DNA of 64,000 bases from the IMG/VR virus record IMGVR_UViG_3300046513_000221, positions 1 through 64,000 of that record; one strand, 5' to 3'. Positions 3,800-63,705 of this stretch are shown here, piece by piece. Every line of letters starts with the position of its first letter. Position 1 is the first letter of the stretch. The notes below the pieces were generated by a model, which was not told the origin of the DNA, did no database searches, and saw nothing but the letters and a program-made list of their open reading frames with translations. The position numbers and the translations under genes were made by a program.

Positions 3800-4445
3800 T
3801 TACAAAAAATAAGAGAGATGGCCCGATGCCGAAGCACCGAGCCTCTCAACTGCTTCCCTTTTCTGGTGGAGTGGGTCGCTATCTTCTTCTCGTCTGTTGC
3901 TACGTTGGATTTTGAGGTACAGCTGTGTCGTGTGTACTGCCGATACTGCCTTTTCGACCGTGTCCAGTCTACGTTTGGGTTCCACAGGCCACCATTTCGC
4001 CTGAATCGTTAAGCACCGCCTCGTGGCGGCTCTCTGGGTGATGTGATGAGCGCGTTTCAGCCCCATCCGGTACTCGCCCGGTACGTTACTGTGCTACGAG
4101 TCATAGGGAGGAAACCATTTGTCCGTGTCCCTACGAAGTTGATCCCTCAGTCCCCGACGGTCTGAAGAATTTTGATGCAAGAAGTGAGGTTGAGGTGGGT
4201 AGCTTAAAGGCTTCTTCTCCGCTCGTGTGAAGGGGTGGAGAGAAAGGACGCCTCCCTCCTACCCGGAGAGTGGATCCCAATTAGGTGCCTCAGCGAATCG
4301 ATAAGCTGACCCACCGAGGCGAGAACGGTTCTCGAACTAGGTTCGATCCCCATTGGACCGGATTAACGGTAACCCTTTCGGGCTGCTTGAGAACGGGGGT
4401 TCCGTGGAATTCCCCGTAGTTGTTAGATGAACCTTTCAGTCCATC
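3800..4445 (-). ncRNA. candidate ~650-nt structured non-coding RNA
   Basis: No credible ORF. Bounded by an ATATATTAT promoter motif (4452-4460) and a terminator (3803-3847). Many inverted repeats, including the long-range pair GGTGGGT-AGCTTA / TAAGCT-g-ACCCACC. Confidence 0.45.
3803..3847 (-). terminator. intrinsic terminator (UUCG loop)
   Basis: Minus strand GAGAGGCTCGGTGC-TTCG-GCATCGGGCCATCTCTC followed by a T-rich tract. Confidence 0.7.
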
Positions 4446-38739: not shown

Positions 38740-40308
38740 TTACTCCTTGGTGAGCATGTACAGTGCCAGACCACCCTCACGATGGATGCCCCGGATGAAG
38801 TTACCCTGAGTATCCATATAGTTCATCGGCGAGAACATGATCTTTTCCGCCTCGATGTTGGCCTCTGCGGAGAACAGACCTGCCACACGCATCGTGTCGC
38901 CGTCGTAGTCACCACCGAGACCCTTCATGTATGCGAAGTTCGGTACGTAGGTGTCGATCCACTGGATCTTGTCTTCGAGGATCGTGTTCTTACCATCGGT
39001 CGGGAAGAACGGGTAGTCCTTGAAGTTCTTGTTACCGGTTCCGCCCTCGCTCACCAGACCGGACACGTCCACGGTTTTCTCCGTGGTCAGGATCTTCACC
39101 CGGCAGGTGATGACGGACTCGGGACCAGTCACCGGGAAGCGGGTGGCGATTACGTGCTTGTCGCGGCACACGTCGATCGCGGCGTCGTACAGGAAGTCGG
39201 TCAGTGTGTAGTGGCGATCCGGCAGACCCTTGATACCCTCGATGTTTTTCATGATCGGAGTGCGATCACCGACGCCGTTCAGACGAAAGGCCTGAGTACG
39301 GATCCGCTTAGTCTTGTCCTTGATGTAGCCGTTCACGATCTTCTGGATGTTCGCGGACGAGATGGTCTCGTACACGGTGTCCTGTAGGTCGTAGCGTTCG
39401 TCACCCTCCAGTACGATCGATGCCGAGTGCTCGTACTCATGGAAGAAGTCTTCGATCCACTTGATGATGAACGGATAGAACAGGTTCAGTGCCAGATGGA
39501 GCGGTACCCCGAAGTAGTTGTATGGGATCTGCTGCGTCTCGGGGGTGTTGCTCTTGATCTGCGAGCAGGAGAGCACGCCGATGGTCGAGTAGTCGATGGA
39601 CTTACCCATGATGGCCTGACGGATCACGCCCTTCTTACCGGCGATCTTCTGAGTCAGTTCCTTATGGATCTCGACCAGCAGGTTCTGCACGGAGGATTGG
39701 GTGATGTAGCTGTTCTCGAAGATGATGGCCTCCGAGGTGGCGGCATTCAGGAGCTTGATGTACAGGGCGTTGACACCCTCCACAGTGATCTTCTTGGAGC
39801 CGGACTGACTGGAGAAGTTCACATCGCGGTAGTAGGCAGGGATGACCAGCCACTTGTCGAGGAAGATCTCATCGAACTTGAGCATGTTGAGCAGCTCGTC
39901 CTTCTTCTCGCGGCTAGCGTTGATAGTACCTTCCTTCACCCACTTGATCTTCTTCCAGTTCTTGACGAAGAAGTCGATGCCGCACTCACCCTGCTCCGGG
40001 TCGTCGGACACAACGAGGTTGCCGAACTGGTCGAGCCGGACGTACTTGTCACCAGCCAGAACGAGCGGCAGCGCACGAAACATCTGGAAGATGGTGATGT
40101 ACACCATCGGGTGAAAGAACTTACGACGGAGATCGATAAAGCCGAAGTTGTTCTTACGCTCTTCCGAGCCGAACTTACCGAAGATCTTTGTCGAGAACAG
40201 ACCGTCCTCGCTTGGGAGTCCATCCGATCCGAGATAGAAGCGGTTGTTTACTTGCTCGCAGCCGTTCACACGGATGAACTCGTTCATGTTGAATGCGTCT
40301 AATTGCAT
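38740..40308 (-). CDS. rpoC: phage multisubunit RNA polymerase beta-prime subunit, N-terminal/catalytic half (probably virion RNAP), 522 aa
   Basis: SEDGLFSTKIFG, GFIDL, GKKGVIRQAIMGKSIDYS, RFP and catalytic GGDYDGD. Confidence 0.9.
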   Translation of the reverse strand: MQLDAFNMNEFIRVNGCEQVNNRFYLGSDGLPSEDGLFSTKIFGKFGSEERKNNFGFIDLRRKFFHPMVYITIFQMFRALPLVLAGDKYVRLDQFGNLVVSDDPEQGECGIDFFVKNWKKIKWVKEGTINASREKKDELLNMLKFDEIFLDKWLVIPAYYRDVNFSSQSGSKKITVEGVNALYIKLLNAATSEAIIFENSYITQSSVQNLLVEIHKELTQKIAGKKGVIRQAIMGKSIDYSTIGVLSCSQIKSNTPETQQIPYNYFGVPLHLALNLFYPFIIKWIEDFFHEYEHSASIVLEGDERYDLQDTVYETISSANIQKIVNGYIKDKTKRIRTQAFRLNGVGDRTPIMKNIEGIKGLPDRHYTLTDFLYDAAIDVCRDKHVIATRFPVTGPESVITCRVKILTTEKTVDVSGLVSEGGTGNKNFKDYPFFPTDGKNTILEDKIQWIDTYVPNFAYMKGLGGDYDGDTMRVAGLFSAEANIEAEKIMFSPMNYMDTQGNFIRGIHREGGLALYMLTKE

Positions 40309-40337: not shown

Positions 40338-40349
40338 TAAAGTACTGTT
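40338..40349 (-). promoter_or_regulatory. putative late promoter AACA-N6-TA
   Basis: AACAgtacttTA upstream of beta-prime. Confidence 0.7.
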
Positions 40350-40406
40350 ACTCTTTAAACTAAAGGAGTTTTGTCGGTAATTACCTGAAAGCACCAGCTG
40401 TGCGCA

Positions 40407-40418
40407 AACAGTTGGTTA
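40407..40418 (+). promoter_or_regulatory. putative late promoter AACA-N6-TA
   Basis: AACAgttggtTA upstream of 40448. Confidence 0.7.
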
Positions 40419-45849: not shown

Positions 45850-47535
45850 CTATGCCAGCAGCGCCTCCAGATCGACGATGACGTCGTTGACGTCAGGCAG
45901 ACCGAGGAGTTCCTTGCCGATTCGGATGATATCGTTCTCGGCGATGAGGCCGGGGATGATATCGTCGAGTTCCGGACGCTTGTCGCACATGATCTTGCCG
46001 ATCATGGTGTCCGCATCGATGTTACCTGCCAGAATGATCGATGGATACATGGACGATAAGTCCTCGTCCACAATATTCTCGAAGATGCGATTGGAGCGCT
46101 TGCCATCCTTGCTGATGACGATGCCGACGGCGTCCATCATCTCAGGCAGAGCCACGAATGCACCCTTGAACTTCTTCTTCTCTTCCTCTTCCTTCAGACG
46201 GTTGTGGTTGTTGGACAGGAGGAAACCCTCCTTCTCCAGAACCATCGCCGCGAAGTTACGGATCGAGGTGGTCTTGGTCATGACCTTGTTGAAGCGGGTC
46301 GCGGTCATCAGGCCCATGTTGTACAGCAGGTCGATGTCGTTGTTCTGCTCTTCGAGCTGATACAGACGGAACGAGTCATACATCGAGTACTTGAGGAAGC
46401 TCTCGTAGTTGATGTACATCGCGTCCGTGATCTCGCCCTCGTACTCATACTTACCTTCGATCCCCTCGTCGATCAGGATCGCATCCAGAGCGTACGATTC
46501 GCGCTTGCCCATCGTCGCCCGGATCTTGGCGAACTGCTCCTGCATCTCGACGAACTGCGAGTAACCTGCAACCTCCAGCTTGGTGTTCCGCTTGGTGAAG
46601 TCGGTTGCGAAGGAATCGTTCTCGATCCATGTGGACTTGTACGGCAGCTCCTTTGGACACATCACCTCTTCAGGCTTTAGCTTCAGTCGGAGCATACGGT
46701 TCTTCATGGTTACCAAGTCGAACCCGGCGTTCCAAGCACCCATGAAGTCGGGTTTGTCACGCTTCACGATCTTGAAGAAGTCCTTCAGCAGCTCCGCCTC
46801 ATCGTCGTAGATGTGTACCTCGATCGCACGCACCTTGGCGTAATCGATCTTGGAGTTTGGATCCTTCTCGTTCATCTCGTCGATGACCTGAGAGATCCAC
46901 TCATCGCCGTATTCTGCGAATGCTTCAAGGAAGTCCATCTGAGATTGGTTGTTCTCGTTCTTCAGGATGAACGAGTGGATGGTCATCGTCGGCTGGTGGA
47001 TGTACGAGATCATCGACACCGGACATGGAGCCAGCTCTGGTTCAGGAAACTCCCTGTACTCCGACACATCGACCTCAATATCGTAGAACGCCTTGGTGAT
47101 CGGCAGGACTGCGATCTGGTGACGGTTGCGGTCGAGCCACTCACGCGTCTTGTAGTCTGCCAGATCCATGTCCGTCAGGTGCAGGTTGTTGTCCTTGTGG
47201 AGGTTACGGAGTTCCTTCCACTTACCGTTGTTCTTACAAGCCTTGTAGAAGTCCATCTGGTCGGAGGCCTTAGCCATCTCATACTGCAGATTGTCGAACT
47301 TCACGGTTATCGGCTCGACCTTGTCGAACTCGATGTAATTCGCTGCCTTCTTCAGCCTGAACTCGTCCTTGGTAATGTAGAACGTGTAGGACGGATCCTC
47401 CTCGATCTCGAATTGCTTCTTGATCGTACCATCCGGTTGAAGTACGCTCTCCACATAGATGATCTTGGAGTGCTGGCGATTGTTGTCGTCACGATCGCGA
47501 ACGTGCAAGACGTTCGATAGCTGTTTTCCGCTCAT
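45850..47535 (-). CDS. polB: family B DNA polymerase, N-terminal subunit (3'-5' exonuclease plus palm motif A), 561 aa
   Basis: ExoI FYDIEVD, ExoII WNAGFD, ExoIII YSMYD, motif A DEDLSSMYPS. Lacks motifs B and C. Confidence 0.9.
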   Translation of the reverse strand: MSGKQLSNVLHVRDRDDNNRQHSKIIYVESVLQPDGTIKKQFEIEEDPSYTFYITKDEFRLKKAANYIEFDKVEPITVKFDNLQYEMAKASDQMDFYKACKNNGKWKELRNLHKDNNLHLTDMDLADYKTREWLDRNRHQIAVLPITKAFYDIEVDVSEYREFPEPELAPCPVSMISYIHQPTMTIHSFILKNENNQSQMDFLEAFAEYGDEWISQVIDEMNEKDPNSKIDYAKVRAIEVHIYDDEAELLKDFFKIVKRDKPDFMGAWNAGFDLVTMKNRMLRLKLKPEEVMCPKELPYKSTWIENDSFATDFTKRNTKLEVAGYSQFVEMQEQFAKIRATMGKRESYALDAILIDEGIEGKYEYEGEITDAMYINYESFLKYSMYDSFRLYQLEEQNNDIDLLYNMGLMTATRFNKVMTKTTSIRNFAAMVLEKEGFLLSNNHNRLKEEEEKKKFKGAFVALPEMMDAVGIVISKDGKRSNRIFENIVDEDLSSMYPSIILAGNIDADTMIGKIMCDKRPELDDIIPGLIAENDIIRIGKELLGLPDVNDVIVDLEALLA

Positions 47536-49979: not shown

Positions 49980-51563
49980 ATGTCTATCAGCTACGATACC
50001 GTCCACCAAAGCACCGTGGGCAGCAAAGTCTCCGCCATTCTGGAAAAACTGCCAGCGATCAACGAATCGTTCGCAGCAGAAGGCCTGAACGTCCTGAACG
50101 AAGGTTTCTCGGAAGTTGCTGCTAACAAGCACTACTACGAAGACTACGTCACCAAGCTGAGCGAAGGTCTGGACCCGGTAGCTGCCGCCCAGTTCCAATC
50201 GCTGGCCGACACCACCCGTACCCAGATCCTGCAAGAAAGCTCGATCTCGGGCATCAACCCGATCACCGCACTGGCGCTGCCGATGCTGCGCGTGGCATGG
50301 CCAAAAACCTCGATCCGCGAAGGCTTCCCGACCGAACCGGTCATGCAGCCGAAGTTCAAGGTGACCTGGCTGAAGCCGTACTTCATCGACGCTTCGACCA
50401 ACGAAAAGATCTTCATGCCTGCTGGCATCAGCAAGCGTAAAGACCTGTTCAAGCTGAAAATGCTGCAGGAAACCCCAATTCTGGTCGGCGCTGCCGGTCT
50501 GAACGGCTACGACCTGCTGACCCCTGTCGGCGCGAACGCATCGCTGGGCGACGAAATCGATCCGAACTTCTCGATCAGCGGCGTGACCTTCAAGGCACTG
50601 GACGCAACCGGCGCTAACCCGGTCAACGTCACCGTGGACGTCGAGTTCGAACTGGACACCAACATCGACGTGATCGAAGGCACCGCCTCCGGCAAGCACA
50701 CCGATGGTACCGACAACAAAGTTCGCGTGTTCGCGAAACTGAACCGTCGTGACGGCCAGATGGACGTCGTCGGTCTGGGCCGCGAAGTCGTCAGCGTAAC
50801 CGTCAAGGGCTACCTGTCGTCCGAAGCCAACAACCGCGCTACCCAAGTCGGTTTCGACGTTACGTCGGACGAGACCGTCATCGGTACCGGCCAACCGATC
50901 GAATCGCCGATCAACATCCAGCAGATGACCGACACGATGGCGATGTACAACATCGACTCGACCGTCAAGACGCTGGAAATCATGTCCACCGCGCTGGCAC
51001 AATCGACCGATCTGGAAGGCATCGACTTCCTGGAGCGTCGCTTCATGCTGGGCCTGAAACTGCAGACCGAGTTCGACGTGAACCCACCTGCCAACTTCCA
51101 GCTGGGCAACACCGCATGGCGCGAAGAGATCAAGATCAAGATCGACAATCTCGTGACCCGTCTGATGCAGTCCACCAACATCACCGCTGGCTCGGTCGTG
51201 ATCTTCGGCAACCCGCTGGACACGCAGATCCTGTCGAACGTGAAGTGGATGTACTCCGGCGAAGACCAGCCTAACGGCGTCAACATCGAGTACCGCGTCG
51301 GTAACTACACCTCCGGCGTGACGAACTACAAGGTTCTGTCGTCGTTCAACTTCGGTCAAGGCGAGCTGTACGTCGCGTTCCTGCCATCCACCCCGGATCA
51401 GGCGACGCTGAAGTACTACCCGTACTCGTTCAACGTTGTGCGCGGCACCGCCTCGCCTAACCGCACGTTCAACCCTGCTGTTCAGATGATCAAACGCCAC
51501 GTCTTCAAGGAGTACTCCTCGATGGTCGGCAAGATCAAGATCAAGAACAACAACGGCCTGTAA
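49980..51563 (+). CDS. major capsid protein precursor, 527 aa
   Basis: Extreme codon bias, own late promoter and terminator, N-terminal propeptide ending ILQE|SS, and HK97-type segments (ALPMLRVAWP, QMTDTMAMYNID, GNPLD). Confidence 0.8.
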   Translation: MSISYDTVHQSTVGSKVSAILEKLPAINESFAAEGLNVLNEGFSEVAANKHYYEDYVTKLSEGLDPVAAAQFQSLADTTRTQILQESSISGINPITALALPMLRVAWPKTSIREGFPTEPVMQPKFKVTWLKPYFIDASTNEKIFMPAGISKRKDLFKLKMLQETPILVGAAGLNGYDLLTPVGANASLGDEIDPNFSISGVTFKALDATGANPVNVTVDVEFELDTNIDVIEGTASGKHTDGTDNKVRVFAKLNRRDGQMDVVGLGREVVSVTVKGYLSSEANNRATQVGFDVTSDETVIGTGQPIESPINIQQMTDTMAMYNIDSTVKTLEIMSTALAQSTDLEGIDFLERRFMLGLKLQTEFDVNPPANFQLGNTAWREEIKIKIDNLVTRLMQSTNITAGSVVIFGNPLDTQILSNVKWMYSGEDQPNGVNIEYRVGNYTSGVTNYKVLSSFNFGQGELYVAFLPSTPDQATLKYYPYSFNVVRGTASPNRTFNPAVQMIKRHVFKEYSSMVGKIKIKNNNGL

Positions 51564-51664: not shown

Positions 51665-52555
51665 ATGACCATGAACCACCCAAGCAATTTTACTCAAGAG
51701 CTGCACGCATATGCCGAACAGGCAGGTTGCGGTCTCACCACGCTGAGTTCCGATGTGATCGATGGCTACGTCATCGACATCGCCGACCCGGCCAGCCGCG
51801 TGGCTATCAACCTCGTACCCCTGAACGGGATCGAGAGTCCAGACAACAGGTTGCTCGAAATGTCCATGAAGGCACATGAGAACAACTTCACACTCTATCA
51901 CGTCTTCGAATCGGACTGGATGCATCGTCGCTCAGTCCTGATGAAGAAGATCGACTCCCTTCTCGGGATTGGCAGCGAAGAGAAAACGATCTACCGCTCG
52001 AAAAAGTGTGAGATCCGGCGCATCGATGAGAAGACCTTCCGGGAATTCTTCCGCACCAATTCGGTCGCGGTAACATCGAAAGCCGATAAGTACTTCGGAA
52101 TGTATCCGATCGACAAGCAAGACACAACACTGGTCGCGGCGATCGCCGTTAAGAACCTGAAGAAGGATCCGAACGGCTCCATCATCACGTCCTATGTGAC
52201 CAACCTCGACCACAAGGTCGTTGGTGCTTTTGGCAAGTTCGTGGGATACCTGAAGGGCGGCAAGAACTACTGTCTGTACCACGCGGATCTCCGCTGGTTG
52301 GACCTGCGTTCGACCTTCCTCAACAAGGCTTCCATGAAGTTCGTCAAGGTGTCGGAGCCACTGCGCTTCGCCTACACCCAGAGCATCAAGAAGCTCCACC
52401 TGCTGAACGGGATGACCCGCGAGAGTCTTTCGTCCCGCGTATCCTTGTCGAAGCCGTACGATACACGGCTCTCGATTGAGGATAATCTGGCAGCGAATGA
52501 CTTCAGCTTCATCCGCGATGCTGGCTGTATGATCTTCTCCTCGAAGAAGAACTGA
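51665..52555 (+). CDS. Hef-like homing endonuclease homolog, apparently degenerate, 296 aa
   Basis: HVFESDW...KKCEIRRIDEK...F..N...HKVVGAFGKF...YHADLRW pattern. The nuclease motif reads DIADP..VAINL. Confidence 0.5.
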   Translation: MTMNHPSNFTQELHAYAEQAGCGLTTLSSDVIDGYVIDIADPASRVAINLVPLNGIESPDNRLLEMSMKAHENNFTLYHVFESDWMHRRSVLMKKIDSLLGIGSEEKTIYRSKKCEIRRIDEKTFREFFRTNSVAVTSKADKYFGMYPIDKQDTTLVAAIAVKNLKKDPNGSIITSYVTNLDHKVVGAFGKFVGYLKGGKNYCLYHADLRWLDLRSTFLNKASMKFVKVSEPLRFAYTQSIKKLHLLNGMTRESLSSRVSLSKPYDTRLSIEDNLAANDFSFIRDAGCMIFSSKKN

Positions 52556-53211: not shown

Positions 53212-55176
53212 ATGAGCGGAGTCTACCATGACAAATATTTCGAGACGCTGGAACGGCGTCTCAGCCTCGTCTGCGGCGAACTCAGCGACGAGGATCGTGC
53301 AAAGCTCCGGGAGCGCATCTGGGCGATGCGCAAGCCAATCGAACTGACGATCGAAAACAACTACAAAGACACATGGATCGATACCAACTCGGAAGAGATC
53401 CTCAACATCATCTACGACAAGAAGCCGAACATCTCCGGCTATGGCGTACTGTTCAACCACAAGCCGAACATCCCCGGTCGCGTTCTGGACTTCCTGCTGA
53501 AGGAACGTAAGGTCAAGAAGAACAAGATGTTCGACCACCTGAACGACGACGACAAGACCATGTACAACAAGCTGGACGTGGAGCAGAAGGTGCTCAAGGT
53601 TCTGGCGAATGCGTACTACGGTGCGTTCGGTCAGCGTTCGTTCCACTTCTTCAATCCGTTCCTTGGTCCATCAGTGACCTACACGGGTCAGCACATCATT
53701 CTGAGCGCGATTCTCGGCTTCGAATCGTTCATGTCGGACAACTTCGCGTTCTTCACGTTCGACCAGCTGCTGAAGTACGTGGACAACATCACTCAGGAGT
53801 TCGACGCCGAGCTGACGGCTCTGGACGAGAAGGTCACCGTCGAGCAGGTGTACGCTCGTCTGTCCGGCAAGTGCAACTTCGAGCTGACCGAGGAGCAGCA
53901 GATGGTGCTGGGCGGCGTCCTCGATGACATGCCTTACACCCAGCTGGAGCGTCTGTTCCTCAAGAACAACCTGTTCTTCCTGCTGCGTAACTCCACGGAG
54001 GTGCGTGACATCTTCGGTGAGTGCTTCAGTTCGGAATTCCTCGATCCAGACCATCCTCCGAAGGAGATCGCTGAGAACGTCGAGGCACTGAACGAGTACT
54101 TCAGCTACTTCGTCTCCTATCCGTACCAGTGGGACGACAAGTACGAGACTGCGCAGAATATCAAACGCAAAACCGTGCTGATCTCCGACACGGACTCCAC
54201 ATTCCTCAATATGGATCCTGCCGTCAAGTGGTACGAGGAAACGTTTGGTGTCAAGCTTGATAAAGTGGGCAAGATCAACGTCTGCAACATCATGGTATAC
54301 AACGTTACGAAGTTCATCGAGAAGGTGTTCTACCAGCTTACGACGAACCTGAACGTGAAGGAGAACATGCGTTCGAAGATCAATATGAAATCCGAGTTCA
54401 ACTTCTCCCGGATCATCTTGACTAAGAACAAGAAGCAGTATGCAGGTCAGATCGTTCTACAAGAAGGCAAGCTGCTCGGTAAGCCCAAGTTCGCGGTCGT
54501 CGGCCTGTCAATCAAGAAGGTCGGTACTCCTAAGATCGCTCGCAAGCGGTTCAATGACATTCTCGAAAAGGACATGTTGTTGGCCGACGTCATCGATCCG
54601 CTGGTACCGTTCATGAAGTTCATGGAGTTCGAGCGCGACATCAACAACTCGCTCCGGGCCGGTGAGTCGAGCTTCCTGAAACCGGCGCGCTTCACCGCTG
54701 AACGCGCCTACAAGAAGCCATTCACTCAGCAGACCGTTCGCGGCGTACGCCTCTGGAATGCTATCTTCCCCAACAGGAAGATCCCTAACTTCACCTCCGT
54801 CAATATGCTGAAGCTGCGTAAGTACTCGCTGCCGAAGTTCGAAGTGGACAAGGATGGCGAACCGGTAGAGAACGTCAACAAGGAAGTCGACATTCTGGAA
54901 TTCATGGAGGAGATTGCTAAGCTGAATCTCGCCGAGAATATTCTGGAGGGCATCGCCGAGTTCATCCAGACCCCGGAGATCGGCAACTACGGCATCGACG
55001 TGATCGCCATTCCGAAGGACATCGACCAGTTCCCGGAGGAGCTGGTTCCTCTGGCCGACATCAGTTCCATCATCAACGACAACATGAAGAATGGTAACAT
55101 CCTTCTGGAGTCCATTGGGTTCAAGGTAATCAAGAGCCTGAAGTACGATACGGTGAGTAACATCATCGAGATCTAA
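53212..55176 (+). CDS. polB: family B DNA polymerase, C-terminal subunit (fingers motif B, palm motif C, thumb), 654 aa
   Basis: QKVLKVLANAYYG (motif B), ISDTDS (motif C), KNKKQYAG and GLSIKK. Confidence 0.9.
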   Translation: MSGVYHDKYFETLERRLSLVCGELSDEDRAKLRERIWAMRKPIELTIENNYKDTWIDTNSEEILNIIYDKKPNISGYGVLFNHKPNIPGRVLDFLLKERKVKKNKMFDHLNDDDKTMYNKLDVEQKVLKVLANAYYGAFGQRSFHFFNPFLGPSVTYTGQHIILSAILGFESFMSDNFAFFTFDQLLKYVDNITQEFDAELTALDEKVTVEQVYARLSGKCNFELTEEQQMVLGGVLDDMPYTQLERLFLKNNLFFLLRNSTEVRDIFGECFSSEFLDPDHPPKEIAENVEALNEYFSYFVSYPYQWDDKYETAQNIKRKTVLISDTDSTFLNMDPAVKWYEETFGVKLDKVGKINVCNIMVYNVTKFIEKVFYQLTTNLNVKENMRSKINMKSEFNFSRIILTKNKKQYAGQIVLQEGKLLGKPKFAVVGLSIKKVGTPKIARKRFNDILEKDMLLADVIDPLVPFMKFMEFERDINNSLRAGESSFLKPARFTAERAYKKPFTQQTVRGVRLWNAIFPNRKIPNFTSVNMLKLRKYSLPKFEVDKDGEPVENVNKEVDILEFMEEIAKLNLAENILEGIAEFIQTPEIGNYGIDVIAIPKDIDQFPEELVPLADISSIINDNMKNGNILLESIGFKVIKSLKYDTVSNIIEI

Positions 55177-58415: not shown

Positions 58416-60878
58416 ATGAAAAAGAATTCGGACCAAAAACTGAAGGTCAGCGCAAGCGCCGTCAAGGCCTTGGAGTCGCTCTCGAAGAGCAACAACAAGC
58501 TTTTGACCGCGCAGGACGGTATCCCTGATATCATGCTCAACGCCGGTTCCAAGACCGAGCGGCTGGGCAAGAACCTCAACTCCGTCATCGCCAGAGCCTA
58601 TAACAACTTCGTGGGACTGGGACAGGACGTCAACGCCCATGAGGTGAACCAACTGCTGGCGCTCTCGAAACGTAAGGGCGACAAGCGTTCCACCAACGTG
58701 AAGAAGCAGCTGGAGGATTTCAAGAAATCCGTCGGCACCAACGACCAAGCCGCGATGCTCGTGCAGCAACGCAAGACCTACAAGGCTAGTCTCTACAGCT
58801 CTTACGACCTCATCCTCAACATCATCCCCAAGATGAAGCTGGCAGTCAACACGATCGCCAACAGCATCATCTCTCCGGACGACTTCAGCAAGCACAGCTT
58901 CGCCTCGATGTTCAACGAGACCCGGATGAGCAAGGAGAACATCGATGTGACCAAGGAGCGGGTCAAGGATCTGCTCAAGAAGCACAAGATCGAGGACGAG
59001 CTGAAGGCCGATGTGGTTGACGCACTCGTCAAGGGCGAGAAGTTCTTCGCCGTCCTTTCCATGAACGACGAGATCAAGTCGCTCCTGAAGGAGAATGCCG
59101 ACACCGAGAAGGATGGTGGCTACGAGACCCTCAAGGGTTCCTGCGGCTCCATGCTCAACGAGGCGGCAATGCATCGCGACGAGGGCTACATGGTCGAGGA
59201 AGGCCTCGCCCTCTTCAGCGAGAGCAAGGACGAGAAAGATCAGACCAAGGTCGCCGAGAAGCGCAAGAAGTTCGTGGACGACCTCGACGAGTTCCTGCAC
59301 GAGAACCTGATCATCGGCGACAGCAAGAACTTCCTCGCAGAGCATCTGGAGCAGGAAACCGAACTCAACGAGAGCGCGATCTTCCAGCGCTACAGCCAGA
59401 ACGCAAATGACACGCCAGAGAAGACGGATACTACTTCCGGCCTCGACGGTCTGCGTCTCAGCACCGACAGCGCAGTGCTGAAGCGTCTGGATGCCGACAA
59501 CGTGGTCAAACTGGAGTACGATGGTCGTACCTACGGCTATATCTACCTCGATGTGGTCAAGTCAGACAAGAACGACAAGACCACCAAGCCGGGTGCCGCA
59601 AGCAGCTCCGGTGGCATGATGGCGGGTAACTCCAACAGCGTGACCTCGTCGATTCAGGGTGTCCTGTACTCGGCCAACGATGTCGATCGCGGCATCAACA
59701 ATACCGGTCAAAAATCCGGTCAGGTTCTGAACGATCCGAAGCTGGCGTTCATCGCCGATGCCTTCGTGAATCGTCTGAGCCAGAAGGAAAACATCCGTCT
59801 GATCCGGAAGAACGAGCAGCTGAAATACATGATCTACCATTCGCTGATCACGAAGCGGATCACGAAGGACGAGAAGATGCGCATCATCTTCTTCTCGGCG
59901 AATGAAGTCGTTCACATCGACCGCAAAGAATCGATCTTCGACAACATTCTCTTCTTCGCGAAGATGTACATCGCGACCCTGATCACCATTCTGATGCAGA
60001 ACATCGTACGCGGCGCAGACAAGCGCGCCTACTACATCGACATCGGCTTGGAGAACGACGCCGCCAACGCGGTGAACGACGTGATCCGGAGCGTGAAGGC
60101 CAAGGACATCGCTAACCTCCACAACATGGACATCGGTTCCGTGCTGAACGTCCTCGGCGAGTTCAACGACTACTACATGCCGACCATCGACGGCGAGAAG
60201 CCTATCACGATGGAGACGATCGAGGGTCTGAGCAACGTATCGCTCGACAACGATTTCCTCAACTGGCTGTCCAACAATATCTTCTCCGGTATCGGTCTGC
60301 CATCGGCGTACCTGACCGAAGTCGAGAACGTGGACTTCGCCAAGACGCTGGGTATGCAGTCGGCACGCTTCATCCGCGACATCATCGCGGAGCAGATCAT
60401 CTTCGGCAAGGGCTACTCCGAGTTGCTGCAGAAGCTGTACCTGATCGAGCACGGCGACCCTCGCAAGAAGGCCGCTGCTGCCAAGTCGGACGGCTCGACC
60501 CCGGAAGATGGAAAGAAGAGCAAGGAGAAAGACGACGATGTGCTGTTGGACATTGAGTCCCTCTGCGTCAAGTTCCCCTCCCCGGTCAGTCTCAACATGA
60601 CCAACCTGAACGACCAGCTGAACAACCTCAACATGCTCGTCGAGACCCTCGGCGACATCATCGATGTACCGGAGGCCGACAAGGCCATCGGTCAGACCGC
60701 ATTCAAGCGAGAAATGTACAAGAAATTCTTGTCCAACCTCGACTGGGAAGCGGTGGAGGAGATCATGAAGAAGGTCCAGCAGGAGGTGATCAAATCTAAG
60801 CTGAATCCGGCTAATGCCCCGGCAGATGCAGCTCCACCTGCGGGAGCGGACGACGGCAGCGAAGACGACGCACCATAA
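58416..60878 (+). CDS. portal protein (T4 gp20-like), 820 aa
   Basis: RGADKRAYYIDIG, NDYYMPTIDGEKPITMETIEG and NIFSGIGLPSAYL parallel the gp20 motifs RAPERRVFYIDVG, EDYWLP...TLPG and L.VP.SR. Confidence 0.85.
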   Translation: MKKNSDQKLKVSASAVKALESLSKSNNKLLTAQDGIPDIMLNAGSKTERLGKNLNSVIARAYNNFVGLGQDVNAHEVNQLLALSKRKGDKRSTNVKKQLEDFKKSVGTNDQAAMLVQQRKTYKASLYSSYDLILNIIPKMKLAVNTIANSIISPDDFSKHSFASMFNETRMSKENIDVTKERVKDLLKKHKIEDELKADVVDALVKGEKFFAVLSMNDEIKSLLKENADTEKDGGYETLKGSCGSMLNEAAMHRDEGYMVEEGLALFSESKDEKDQTKVAEKRKKFVDDLDEFLHENLIIGDSKNFLAEHLEQETELNESAIFQRYSQNANDTPEKTDTTSGLDGLRLSTDSAVLKRLDADNVVKLEYDGRTYGYIYLDVVKSDKNDKTTKPGAASSSGGMMAGNSNSVTSSIQGVLYSANDVDRGINNTGQKSGQVLNDPKLAFIADAFVNRLSQKENIRLIRKNEQLKYMIYHSLITKRITKDEKMRIIFFSANEVVHIDRKESIFDNILFFAKMYIATLITILMQNIVRGADKRAYYIDIGLENDAANAVNDVIRSVKAKDIANLHNMDIGSVLNVLGEFNDYYMPTIDGEKPITMETIEGLSNVSLDNDFLNWLSNNIFSGIGLPSAYLTEVENVDFAKTLGMQSARFIRDIIAEQIIFGKGYSELLQKLYLIEHGDPRKKAAAAKSDGSTPEDGKKSKEKDDDVLLDIESLCVKFPSPVSLNMTNLNDQLNNLNMLVETLGDIIDVPEADKAIGQTAFKREMYKKFLSNLDWEAVEEIMKKVQQEVIKSKLNPANAPADAAPPAGADDGSEDDAP

Positions 60879-60889
60879 GAAGTAATGTA

Positions 60890-61046
60890 AACCCCCATAG
60901 ACCGATTAAGGTCTATGGGGATTCTTACACAAGCTTACGTCCATCGTCAGCATTTTTAGCGCGGAGGCTACAGGTCGATGCGCAAGGCTTCCTCTAAGGA
61001 GCAACAGGTTGGGCGCAGACGCTGCGAGTCCACCGCGACAGGGACT
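60890..61046 (-). ncRNA. candidate ~150-nt late small RNA
   Basis: Perfect late promoter (61046-61057) followed by no ORF with an RBS, ending at a hairpin; the 5' and 3' ends can pair. Confidence 0.45.
60891..60921. terminator. bidirectional terminator-like hairpin
   Basis: CCCCATAGACC-gattaa-GGTCTATGGGG. Confidence 0.75.
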
Positions 61047-61057
61047 ATAGGTATGTT
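61046..61057 (-). promoter_or_regulatory. putative late promoter AACA-N6-TA
   Basis: AACAtacctaTA downstream of the tail-tube terminator. Confidence 0.6.
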
Positions 61058-61069
61058 AGGAACTGAAAC

Positions 61070-61106
61070 TGAAGAGCCAATAGACCCCGGAGGATCTATT
61101 GGCTTT
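61070..61106 (-). terminator. terminator of the sheath-tube operon
   Basis: AGCCAATAGACC / GGATCTATTGGCT hairpin. Confidence 0.65.
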
Positions 61107-61114
61107 CAGTCCGA

Positions 61115-61897
61115 TTAGGCCGAAGGGACCGAGGTTGCTACCTCGCTCATGTTCAGGTAATCGTTCTCGTTGTAGAACTTGTAGGTGGACGACTGCGACA
61201 TCTGGGAAGCTGCGAATTTCTCCACAGCGCCGCCGATGTTCATGTAACCCTTGAAGTCCTGTGTCGGCTCGGCGAACTCATGCGAACCCGATTCGAAGTT
61301 GAAGTGGTCCAGGATGATCTTCGTCGGCATGACGTTGGTGTACAGCGCAGCGAACTCGATGTTCGAGCCGTCCGGGCCGTTGCCGAAGTTGTCGGCGTCG
61401 GGACGCGTGACAACGTACAGCAGAATGCCGGTGTGGTTCGACGAGTGGTACGCCAGACCCGATTTCTTCGGATAGGTAGCGATACCCGTCTTCGGATCAC
61501 GGATGCCGGAAACCCACTCGTTGTAGTACTTGGTCTCAGGCGAGCCGGACTTTTCCTGATACTTCAGGGAGAAGCCTTCGGCCTTCTGGACGGTACCCTT
61601 CGCGTGCGAGGTCTCGTTGTTGGTGAAGCCCGACGTGATAGCGCCGGTATCCATCGTCATGTCGCTCAGGCCCGACAGAGCCTTGAAGTTGCGCTCGGAC
61701 AGCTGCTTGAACTCGCGGCCCTCGTCGGTGCCGATCCATTTAGGGACTTTGATCCACTTGATGAATGCGTAACCGGAGACGTACGGGTCTTTGGTGTTTT
61801 CGCCGGTGGCGACGTAGCCGTTGAAGAACGACGCCAGACCGGGATCGACCTTGTGGCTGGTGAGCGAGGTGTCGCGCACCATGTTATCGTTTGCCAT
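61115..61897 (-). CDS. tail tube protein, 260 aa
   Basis: Directly downstream of the sheath gene; DPYVSGYAFIKW, EKSGSP..YYNEW..GIRDP.TG, IE.AALYTNVMP pattern. Confidence 0.7.
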   Translation of the reverse strand: MANDNMVRDTSLTSHKVDPGLASFFNGYVATGENTKDPYVSGYAFIKWIKVPKWIGTDEGREFKQLSERNFKALSGLSDMTMDTGAITSGFTNNETSHAKGTVQKAEGFSLKYQEKSGSPETKYYNEWVSGIRDPKTGIATYPKKSGLAYHSSNHTGILLYVVTRPDADNFGNGPDGSNIEFAALYTNVMPTKIILDHFNFESGSHEFAEPTQDFKGYMNIGGAVEKFAASQMSQSSTYKFYNENDYLNMSEVATSVPSA

Positions 61898-61917
61898 TTC
61901 GATGACCTTTCTGCTGA

Positions 61918-63705
61918 TTAGCGGTTGATGATGAAGTCGGCGAAGATCCGCTCGATCAGACCGTTGAAGGTCAGCTCAACCTGCACACGCACGATCTTTT
62001 GCTGCTTATCGTAGTCGGATGCGTAAACGGTCGCCTTGATGGTCGAGCAAGCACGGTTGCTCACCCACTTCTTCAGGTAACTGTTCAGGTTGTAGGACAT
62101 CGCCTCGTGGGTGATGTCATCGTTGAACTCGTCGCGGTATTCGTCGACGAGTTGCTCGACGTCACGCTTGATACGGAACAGCGCACGAACGTTGTTCAGG
62201 TTCGACAGGGCCGAGTTGACGGTCTGCGAGGTCAGCTGGGTACCGAGATTGACGCGTTTAGGGTCTTTCTCGATGTAGTTGATCTGCTTCTTGTACAGGG
62301 TCTCTTTCCATGCCTCGTTCGGGAAGAAGTTGATGGCTTCGTAGCCCGAGATCACGCCGCGACGTGGACCTGCGAAGGACCAGTGTACGCCGAACTTGTC
62401 GTCGTGCGGGGCGATCTTCTTCGCGAGGAAGTAAGGCGTGGTGACCTTGACGTTCTGGCCGGTGTACTCGTCGTAGACCACGAAGTCCTGTGCGAAGATC
62501 GCGGTGGCGAACGAGGACATACCGATCGAGTTGGTGCGGAAGTCCACGGTCTGCTGCTCATTGGCTTGGAAGCCGCAGTCCAGCAGTGCCACGCAGTCGC
62601 CACGGATGTCCGTAGCCATCTGCGACATGGCGTTCTTCACGGCGGCGCTGTTGTTGCCGTCCAGCATCAGGTCGAACAGGTATTGCTTCTTGTCGGTCGC
62701 GTTGGAGTCCAGCTGGCCGGTGTAGGCTTTGATCAGCAGGGAGTCTTCCGAGTTGCCACCGGTCCAGGTACCTTCCGAGCCGCCCGAGATGTGATTCACG
62801 GTCTTCAGGTCAGCGGCGGTGTCGTCGGTGACTTGGTTATCGGCCAGACCAGCGGTCAGCGGAGTCGCGAACTTGACAGCTTGGTGGATACCTTGTGCGA
62901 CGGACACGCCGTTACGCTCGGCACCGAAGAAGATGTCCAGATGCAGCGGGTTCACAGTATCCGTAGGATTGATGAACTCGCGGATGGTATCGATCAGATC
63001 CTTGCGGTCGAGGACGCGGAAGGTAGTCGAGTACTTGTTGACCACGTTGGCCCAGTACATGGATTCGCGGTTGCGGTCCTTGGCGGTAGGCTCGAACGAA
63101 ACGGTGTATGGACCATCGATGATGGTGTCCACGCCGACCGTGTTCTTCGCGGCGATCTCGAAGGTGTACGTACGGAAGTCGTAGGTACCGTCCAGCGAGT
63201 CCAGCAGCGAGATGCGGAAGCCCAGATCTTCGTAGGCTTTGCCGCGACCGACAGGCATCAGGACGCCCAGCGGGTAGGACACGAAGGTGGCATCGGTCAC
63301 CGGGTCAGCGCCCAGCAGGGTCTGCATCGCGGCGACGGAGGTCGCGCCCGGTACAGTCGTCAGCGTTGGCTTGACGATGTTGGTCAGGCCATCCTGACCG
63401 CAAGCGACGCTCAGCATCGCGTTGGCGTACAGGCCGTCTTCCGGCAGAATGCGGATGAAGTAGGCTTCGCCGCCAGCTTTCAGATGCTCGAACACGTTGT
63501 AGAGCGTCTGGCCGGTTTCCGACATATCGGGTTCACCGAAGTAGAACTTCGCCTCGCCGACGGAGGTCAGGCGCACCAGTTTGTTGTCTGGGCCTTTGGT
63601 TGCTTTACCGCATGCAAACAGGACGGTCGAGCCCTCAGCCGTCTGGAAGACGAAGGAGTTGTCGATGATCCTGGAATGCACTGAAGGGTGGAGATATTCA
63701 GGCAT
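61918..63705 (-). CDS. contractile tail sheath protein, 595 aa
   Basis: MPEYLHPSV..., FAGPRRGVI, LYKKQINYI and LNNVRAL..IKR sheath C-terminal motifs. Confidence 0.9.
   Translation of the reverse strand: MPEYLHPSVHSRIIDNSFVFQTAEGSTVLFACGKATKGPDNKLVRLTSVGEAKFYFGEPDMSETGQTLYNVFEHLKAGGEAYFIRILPEDGLYANAMLSVACGQDGLTNIVKPTLTTVPGATSVAAMQTLLGADPVTDATFVSYPLGVLMPVGRGKAYEDLGFRISLLDSLDGTYDFRTYTFEIAAKNTVGVDTIIDGPYTVSFEPTAKDRNRESMYWANVVNKYSTTFRVLDRKDLIDTIREFINPTDTVNPLHLDIFFGAERNGVSVAQGIHQAVKFATPLTAGLADNQVTDDTAADLKTVNHISGGSEGTWTGGNSEDSLLIKAYTGQLDSNATDKKQYLFDLMLDGNNSAAVKNAMSQMATDIRGDCVALLDCGFQANEQQTVDFRTNSIGMSSFATAIFAQDFVVYDEYTGQNVKVTTPYFLAKKIAPHDDKFGVHWSFAGPRRGVISGYEAINFFPNEAWKETLYKKQINYIEKDPKRVNLGTQLTSQTVNSALSNLNNVRALFRIKRDVEQLVDEYRDEFNDDITHEAMSYNLNSYLKKWVSNRACSTIKATVYASDYDKQQKIVRVQVELTFNGLIERIFADFIINR

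What the first reader, a model, noticed from the sequence alone, without database searches (positions are those of the whole stretch)
60890..61057. Late-promoter-driven ~150-nt non-coding RNA wedged between portal and tail tube
Seen: a perfect AACA-N6-TA lies just downstream of the tube terminator and points at 150 nt with no RBS-bearing ORF, closed by the portal's bidirectional hairpin. The ends can pair (GTCC/GGAC, GTC/GAC, GCGG/CCGC) around an A-rich bulge, with inner hairpins CGCAG/CTGCG and TCCT/AGGA. Inference: a late sRNA. Options include a packaging-associated RNA (compare phi29 pRNA), a 6S-like RNAP decoy, or an antisense regulator of the portal 3' end.
Basis: partly seen in the sequence, partly recalled or inferred. 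Interest (0 to 1): 0.65.

Follow-up and report, generated by a model that had tools for sequence, protein, structure and literature searches.

The report
Orphan late promoter-terminator small RNA cassette
Between the portal and tail-tube genes of an uncultured 263-kb jumbo phage sits a self-contained late promoter-to-terminator unit that most likely makes a ~155-nt non-coding RNA; nine sequenced relatives keep the unit, but its function is unknown and its transcription is unproven.

Summary
AACATACCTATA lies at 61057-61046 on the minus strand. It sits 17 nt after the tail-tube terminator hairpin (61075-61104) and points at about 125 nt with no ribosome-binding-site-led ORF. The unit is closed by the portal hairpin (60893-60920). 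The phage is kin of AR9 and phiR1-37, whose late promoters read AACA-N6-T(A/G). In this genome 34 of 83 motif copies lie in the 7% that is intergenic. Nine related sequences (about six to eight separate lineages) keep the same layout next to the portal gene, while the body has diverged beyond alignment. In all of them the first 10 nt pair with the far end of the body. One subfamily shows compensatory base changes. No small ORF is conserved and no Rfam family matches. Relatives with the same portal and RNA polymerase (AR9, phiR1-37 and others) lack the unit, so it is an accessory element. That rules out a packaging RNA or a core polymerase regulator, and the pRNA and 6S analogies find no support. 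The window's own RNA body folds no better than shuffled sequence. No RNA data exist. Best reading: a moron-like late non-coding RNA gene of unknown function.

The parts
61046..61057 (-). Late promoter motif AACATACCTATA, followed by G. Predicted transcription start is the A at 61046.
   Evidence: One search finds the match. AR9 late promoters read AACA-(6N)-TA/G with the last base as the start (PMC5312081). Genome-wide intergenic enrichment is 34 of 83 copies. The matrix score is 13.4, within the 9.8-23 range of 31 gene-linked sites. The motif with +2 G is kept at the same place in nine related sequences.
60921..61046 (-). Predicted RNA body, 126 nt: 5' end paired to a distal segment, A-rich bulge, CU-rich apical hairpin (CUCCUUA), and an unpaired 3' tail of 18 nt.
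   Evidence: Folds are. Eight of the first 10 nt pair distally; 7 of 120 shuffles reach this. Overall stability is not above shuffles (z = -0.5). No Rfam match. No tRNA or tmRNA.
60893..60920 (.). Bidirectional hairpin (11-bp stem, 6-nt loop) that ends both the portal mRNA (+) and the predicted small RNA (-).
   Evidence: Sequence and fold. An equivalent hairpin abuts the portal stop codon in every relative. Similar hairpins serve other convergent junctions at genome positions 124930 and 133399.
61075..61104 (-). Tail-tube terminator hairpin (13 pairs), just upstream of the promoter.
   Evidence: Terminator scan.
61115..61897 (-). Tail tube gene (260 aa); flanking context.
   Evidence: Pfam PF23806 Phage_TTP_14 at 30.5 bits against a cutoff of 27. 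It is 50% identical to phiR1-37 g150 and 44% to AR9 g127.
58416..60878 (+). Portal gene (820 aa), convergent with the tube gene; flanking context.
   Evidence: BLASTP against the AR9 g128 portal vertex protein gives E 7e-74. Homologues carry PF07230 Portal_T4.
60978..61118 (+). 46-aa ORF on the opposite strand with GGAGG 10 nt upstream of its ATG. Judged spurious.
   Evidence: It has no counterpart of similar sequence in any relative. It would be transcribed only by read-through of the portal terminator.

Best explanation
The segment is a self-contained late transcription unit, a non-coding 'moron'. It was inserted between the convergent portal operon and sheath-tube operon in one sub-clade of AR9/phiR1-37-like jumbo phages.

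Inferred steps: the phage's own late RNA polymerase starts at A61046 on the minus strand. It makes an RNA of about 155 nt whose 5' end is locked in a helix with the distal body. It stops at the hairpin shared with the portal gene.

Shown here: the anatomy and its conservation.

Inferred: the paired 5' end and the 3' hairpin are what one expects of a stable small RNA. The element is accessory, and its shape is conserved more than its sequence.

My low-confidence guess at function (about 0.2) is a trans-acting RNA. Its pyrimidine-rich, anti-Shine-Dalgarno-like loops would pair with purine-rich ribosome-binding sites, or bind a protein.
For: 1. The promoter type is real.
- The phage is AR9/phiR1-37 kin.
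- It encodes jumbo-phage RNA polymerase subunits.
- The AR9 late consensus is AACA-(6N)-TA/G.
- 34 of 83 motif copies are intergenic, including sites before the capsid and sheath genes.

2. Nine related sequences keep the order terminator, AACA-N6-TAG, 87-158-nt body, bidirectional hairpin, portal stop. These are L005/L006, L007, L049, L050, L032, L041, L044, L051 and L055. Their bodies are otherwise unalignable. The chance of the motif in one spacer is 1-6%.

3. In L055 two inserted DUF723 genes carry their own promoter and the unit still abuts the portal.

4. A 5' closing helix is present in all the RNAs. Combined p is 2e-5, or 1e-3 with one RNA per group.

5. Body folding z-scores are -2.2 to -4.2 in 8 of the 10 RNAs folded.

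6. A covariance model built from four sequences finds the L055 unit at E 1e-7. In that subfamily 91.5% of cells pair and 10 pairs change on both sides; 0 of 500 shuffles reach this.

7. No ORF is conserved on either strand.

8. Anti-Shine-Dalgarno 5-mers number 20 on the RNA strand against 6.1 +/- 3.0 in shuffles and 0 on the opposite strand. AAGG occurs 0 times against 2.9 expected.
Against: - There are no expression data. Only DNA runs from rhizosphere metagenomes hold the phage.
- The bodies of the window RNA and of L041 fold no better than shuffles (z = -0.5 and 0.0).
- The covariance model does not detect the window, L032, L044 or L041 units. A single RNA family is therefore unproven.
- The covariation alignment was fitted to the model and has only 5 rows.
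- The anti-Shine-Dalgarno enrichment was noticed first and tested afterwards. Several of the motifs lie inside helices.
- No target stands out. Two 13-nt complements were found in the genome, where about one is expected by chance.
- The junction is a hot spot for mobile DNA. A decaying relic remains possible for the window's own copy.
Confidence: 0.55

Rival explanations
1. Transcriptional buffer between two convergent, highly expressed late operons. What is selected is the extra terminator plus a polymerase-loaded promoter facing the portal gene. Together they stop read-through from either side. The RNA is a harmless, self-folded by-product.
For: Relatives without the unit share one hairpin between tube and portal. 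In AR9 the most abundant antisense RNAs lie over g125/g126, on the sheath side of this same junction. This fits read-through, which is my inference. The unit always abuts the portal terminator.
Against: A second hairpin alone would insulate, so the promoter is unexplained. The conserved 5' closing helix and the covariation in the body point to selection on the RNA itself. The other convergent junctions examined in this genome manage with one hairpin.
Confidence: 0.13
2. Relic of a mobile gene cassette, such as a free-standing homing endonuclease or moron, whose ORF was deleted. Its late promoter, untranslated ends and terminator remain, with no present function.
For: The same junction holds two DUF723/Mom-like genes under a late promoter in L029/L055 and a 299-aa gene in L036. 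Group I introns sit in the tube gene of L037 and the portal gene of L054. The window's own RNA body is not unusually stable.
Against: In L055 the unit coexists with the inserted genes and has its own promoter. A perfect promoter with +2 G is retained in every carrier despite saturated divergence of the body. Compensatory changes occur in one subfamily. No spacer resembles the inserted genes in blastn or tblastx; only the hairpins match.
Confidence: 0.13
3. Cis-antisense partner of the portal mRNA 3' end, in the manner of lambda OOP RNA. Pairing through the shared hairpin, or after read-through into the portal frame, would direct processing or decay of the portal message.
For: The unit is tied to the portal 3' end in every carrier, even after insertions. 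The RNA's last ~30 nt are by construction complementary to the portal mRNA terminator. The U-tract on the small-RNA side is weak in the window, so read-through is conceivable.
Against: The predicted overlap is the hairpin only, and the portal stop codon lies 14 nt beyond it. Any convergent pair sharing a terminator has the same overlap. A conserved, folded 90-160-nt body is not needed for this role.
Confidence: 0.08
4. One reading: a packaging RNA bound to the portal (as in phi29 pRNA), or a 6S-like decoy of the late RNA polymerase.
For: The location next to the portal gene, a rod-like fold with paired ends, and late timing.
Against: No Rfam match to any family. The unit is absent from AR9, phiR1-37, L020, L021, L023 and L052, which have homologous tube and portal genes and, for AR9, the same promoter consensus. 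No large central bubble is conserved. The template-strand mimic UGUU is present in only some copies (direct reading of the sequences).
Confidence: 0.03
5. A small protein gene on either strand, for example the 46-aa ORF at 60978-61118(+) with GGAGG upstream.
For: GGAGG followed by a start codon occurs on the opposite strand in the window, L032 and L051.
Against: The peptides share no similarity or length. The close pair L007/L049 differ by a frame-shifting indel and by loss of the start codon. The promoter points the other way. The window's promoter strand has no Shine-Dalgarno-led ORF.
Confidence: 0.03

Closest known systems
Intergenic small RNAs of jumbo phages mapped by ONT-cappable-seq (201phi2-1, phiKZ; PMC11512511)
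   Same: These are short units (<250 nt) with a start site followed closely by a terminator. Three in 201phi2-1 are intergenic and one is conserved by position among giant phages. Their function is also unknown.
   Different: Those were found by transcript mapping in phiKZ-type Pseudomonas phages, which use other promoter motifs. This one is predicted from sequence alone, belongs to the AR9/phiR1-37 branch, shows no sequence relation to them, and sits at the tube/portal junction.
Morons of tailed phages, and PeSL promoter-terminator cassettes of T4-type phages (PMC2839356, PMC4122927)
   Same: An autonomous promoter-payload-terminator module is inserted between conserved structural genes. It is present or absent among close relatives, and the same site also takes other cargo such as DUF723 genes.
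   Different: The payload here is non-coding. The promoter is late rather than early. The two flanking hairpins are not a conserved repeated motif across lineages.
Lambda OOP RNA (own knowledge)
   Same: A small non-coding RNA from its own promoter, convergent with an upstream gene and ended by an intrinsic terminator.
   Different: OOP overlaps the cII coding 3' end by tens of nucleotides and acts through RNase III. Here the overlap is only the shared hairpin.
phi29 pRNA and bacterial 6S RNA
   Same: Comparable size range, with paired 5' and 3' ends giving a rod-like fold.
   Different: There is no model match. The unit is dispensable in relatives with the same portal and polymerase. No conserved central bubble or inter-RNA loop complementarity was seen.
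AR9 late (non-virion RNA polymerase) promoters
   Same: The consensus AACA-(6N)-TA/G, with the last base as the start, fits exactly.
   Different: In AR9 these promoters drive genes or antisense RNAs. No orphan unit exists at the 51-nt AR9 tube/portal spacer.

Membership tests
AR9-type late promoter | AACA-(6N)-T(A/G), with the last base as the start site | tested here: met
   AACATACCTATA at 61057..61046. Consensus taken from PMC5312081.
AR9-type late promoter | The motif marks gene starts across this genome, and the phage encodes the polymerase type | tested here: met
   34 of 83 copies are intergenic, including sites before the capsid and sheath genes. RNA polymerase subunits phrog_2986 and phrog_2943 lie in the window.
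AR9-type late promoter | Transcription actually starts there late in infection | not testable with these tools
   No RNA run holds the phage.
Structured non-coding RNA gene | Conserved secondary structure with compensatory changes | tested here: inconclusive
   Met in subfamily A (L005, L007, L049, L050, L055): 10 pairs change on both sides and 0 of 500 shuffles reach this. The window's copy is not detected by that model and its body z-score is -0.5. The 5' closing helix is shared by all.
Structured non-coding RNA gene | No conserved reading frame | tested here: met
   L007 and L049 are frame-shifted relative to each other.
phi29 pRNA | Match to the curated RNA family model | tested here: not met
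   No Rfam family at E <= 10 in 60000-62000. None at gathering score in the window or in the kin scanned.
phi29 pRNA | Needed by the packaging motor, hence present wherever the portal type is present | tested here: not met
   Absent from AR9, phiR1-37, L020, L021, L023 and L052.
6S RNA | Match to the family model; a long rod with a large central bubble | tested here: not met
   No Rfam match. Predicted folds show no conserved central bubble.
CsrB/Rsm-type protein sponge | Multiple GGA motifs in loops | tested here: not met
   GGA occurs 16 times against 13.1 +/- 3.2 expected.
Cis-antisense RNA (OOP-like) | Overlap with the coding or untranslated region of the convergent gene | tested here: inconclusive
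   The overlap is limited to the 28-nt shared hairpin, and the portal stop lies 14 nt further on. Read-through cannot be tested.
Moron (autonomous inserted transcription unit) | Own promoter and terminator, inserted between conserved genes, absent from relatives | tested here: met
   The classical protein-coding payload is absent.

The most novel reading that the evidence does not exclude
The units are one fast-evolving family of late, stable phage RNAs. Their exposed pyrimidine-rich (anti-Shine-Dalgarno-like) loops would act in trans by occluding ribosome-binding sites of host or early phage messages, or by decoying a host RNA-binding or defence protein. This would be an accessory, arms-race-type RNA carried as a non-coding moron beside the portal gene of uracil-DNA-type jumbo phages.
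Probability: 0.12. Interest if true: 0.7.

Novelty: new member of a known kind. Interest (0 to 1): 0.45.

Why it matters
Small RNAs of phages, and of jumbo phages in particular, are barely charted, and almost none has a known role. This unit is clean and bounded: a promoter of known type, a defined start, a defined end. Its retention across diverged uncultured relatives, and its presence or absence among kin, make it a tractable candidate. It could be tested with the purified AR9 late polymerase and in any cultured carrier. It also shows that the tube/portal junction of this clade is a landing site for accessory cargo, including non-coding units, DUF723 genes and introns in the flanking genes.

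Tried and rejected
- Nucleotide search of the junction against 50,697 phage records found no match.
- Rfam found nothing for the unit in the window or in the kin scanned. ARAGORN found no tRNA or tmRNA.
- The only other 'orphan' late motif in the genome, at 150128(+), is probably chance. It has the lowest matrix score, and an RBS plus ATG lies on the opposite strand.
- Copies of the portal hairpin at 124930 and 133399 are ordinary terminators with no unit beside them.
- Metagenome contigs L010-L013 and L033-L035 stop right after the tube gene, so they gave no spacer.
- A pattern scan for window-like 5' ends in IMG/VR gave only the window's twin contig plus chance hits.
- Laying the public runs gave DNA contigs only. 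The unit is invariant among three rhizosphere samples, so there is no microdiversity to read.
- The search for a trans target found two 13-nt complements where about one is expected.
- GGA (Csr/Rsm sponge) is not enriched.
- The sense-versus-antisense folding-energy comparison was mixed and does not by itself name the strand.
- Alignment of the window, L051, L032 and L044 RNAs was uninformative.
- Relatives cannot be drawn for a virus record with the genome search.

Full report
**What the window is.** The window is the first 64 kb of a 263,413-bp virus record with terminal repeats and 55% G+C. Its tail tube protein is 50% identical to phiR1-37 g150 and 44% to AR9/PBS1 g127 and matches Pfam Phage_TTP_14. 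The 820-aa protein at 58416-60878 is a homologue of the AR9 portal vertex protein (E 7e-74). Sheath, major capsid, split DNA polymerase and jumbo-phage RNA polymerase subunits are also present. Public runs that hold it are rhizosphere metagenomes, all DNA.

**Anatomy.** The portal gene (+) and the tube gene (-) converge, leaving 236 nt between them. Reading the minus strand from the tube stop codon:
- a 13-pair hairpin at 61104..61075;
- 17 nt of spacer;
- AACATACCTATA at 61057..61046;
- a 126-nt body;
- an 11-pair hairpin at 60920..60893 with U-rich tails on both strands;
- the portal stop codon, 14 nt further on.

**Is the motif a promoter?**
- In AR9, 94 mapped late start sites carry AACA-(6N)-TA/G with the last base as the start (PMC5312081).
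- In this genome 34 of 83 motif copies fall in the roughly 7% that is intergenic. After checking the apparent orphans by eye, nearly all precede a gene by 15-135 nt. These include the capsid gene (49893+), the sheath-tube operon (63788-) and the portal operon (55748+).
- A matrix built from 31 gene-linked sites scores the 61057 site at 13.4, low but inside the 9.8-23 range.
- The only other orphan site, 150128(+), is probably chance. The unit studied here is therefore the single orphan late promoter of the genome.

**Relatives.** Homologues of the tube and portal proteins led to related contigs.
- Nine related sequences, about six to eight separate lineages, carry the same layout: L005/L006, L007, L049, L050, L032, L041, L044, L051 and L055. 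The order is terminator, AACA-N6-TA followed by G, an 87-158-nt body, a bidirectional hairpin, then the portal stop.
- The bodies are unalignable between groups. The chance of the motif arising in one such spacer is 1-6%. The promoter is therefore under selection.
- In L055 two DUF723-type genes with their own late promoter lie between the tube gene and the unit, and the unit still abuts the portal. It is tied to the portal end and is not simply the promoter of a lost gene.
- AR9 (51-nt spacer), phiR1-37, L020, L021, L023 and L052 have one shared hairpin or another gene instead.
- On a tube tree all carriers fall in one supported clade (96/98). That clade also holds L052, which has no unit, and L036, which has a gene in its place.
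- The unit is thus an accessory insertion in one sub-clade.

**Is it an RNA with structure?**
- Whole-transcript z-scores are inflated by the terminator hairpin.
- With the terminator removed, body z-scores are -2.2 to -4.2 in 8 of the 10 RNAs folded, but -0.5 for the window and 0.0 for L041.
- One feature is shared by all. Seven to ten of the first ten nucleotides pair with the distal part of the body, which 0-15% of shuffles reach in each lineage. Combined p is 2e-5, or 1e-3 with one RNA per group.
- A covariance model from L007, L049, L050 and L005 finds the L055 unit over its full length (E 1e-7). It does not find the window, L032, L044 or L041 units.
- In that subfamily 91.5% of cells pair and 10 pairs change on both sides; 0 of 500 shuffles reach this, and slid controls pair about 40%. 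The alignment was fitted to the model and has five rows.
- L007 and L049 differ by three transitions on one strand of a helix that all keep pairing through G-U. This fits selection on the RNA of the promoter strand.

**Coding?** No ORF with a Shine-Dalgarno-like site lies on the window's promoter strand. The ORFs found on either strand in other lineages share no sequence or length. Close relatives differ by frame shifts and by loss of the start codon.

**Leads on function.**
- After noticing pyrimidine-rich apical loops, I counted 5-mers of the anti-Shine-Dalgarno sequence ACCUCCUUA. There are 20 on the RNA strand against 6.1 +/- 3.0 in shuffles and none on the opposite strand. AAGG is absent where 2.9 copies are expected.
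- This test was post hoc. It may reflect avoidance of ribosome-binding sites as much as a seed for pairing with them.
- GGA motifs are not enriched.
- No trans target stands out.
- No RNA family matches.

**Weighing the readings.**
- A late non-coding RNA gene explains the conserved promoter, the defined ends, the paired 5' end, the covariation and the lack of a reading frame.
- An insulator role fits the convergent setting and the abundant antisense RNA seen on the sheath side of this junction in AR9. It does not explain why a promoter and a folded body are kept.
- A relic of a mobile cassette fits the hot-spot nature of the site: DUF723 genes in L055, and group I introns in the L037 tube gene and the L054 portal gene. 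It does not fit the coexistence seen in L055 or the compensatory changes. It remains possible for the window's own copy.
- The pRNA and 6S ideas fail on model match and on dispensability in kin.

**Limits.** Transcription is inferred and was not observed. Homology between the window's RNA and the covarying subfamily is not shown. Public reads gave DNA contigs only, and the unit is invariant among them.

Noticed in passing
L037:2000-2277; L054:3412-3661 and 3973-4277: Group I introns interrupt the tail tube gene of one relative and, twice, the portal gene of another. Rfam Intron_gpI scores are 77-84 bits.
   Followed up: partly
L055:6509-9812 (same contig as L029): Two large DUF723/Mom-like genes (512 and 578 aa) with their own late promoter sit between the tube gene and the small-RNA unit. 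This looks like homing-endonuclease-type cargo at the same junction.
   Followed up: partly
window 60893-60920; genome G000 124930-124973 and 133399-133436: Bidirectional terminators at separate convergent junctions share a near-identical hairpin core (CCATAGRCC ... GGTCTATGG), at 82-84% identity.
   Followed up: partly
window 45850-47535(-), 51665-52555(+), 53212-55176(+): Family-B DNA polymerase is encoded as two separate genes on opposite strands. The major capsid gene (49980-51563) and an HNH/homing-endonuclease-like gene lie between them.
   Followed up: no
window 40338-40418: Two back-to-back late promoter motifs (40349- and 40407+) lie in one 140-nt spacer next to the RNA polymerase beta-like gene at 38740-40308.
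   Followed up: no
L010-L013, L033-L035 (contig ends): Several independent metagenome assemblies of relatives break within 20-75 nt after the tube stop codon. This may reflect strain variation or repeats at the junction.
   Followed up: no
G000 150128-150139(+) (L056:2129-2240): A second apparently orphan AACA-N6-TA lies before a hairpin. It has the lowest matrix score, and an RBS plus ATG sits on the opposite strand, so it is probably chance.
   Followed up: yes
L007:4995-5090: The 3' end of the portal gene of this relative holds about three tandem copies of a 27-nt unit, seen in the printed sequence.
   Followed up: no
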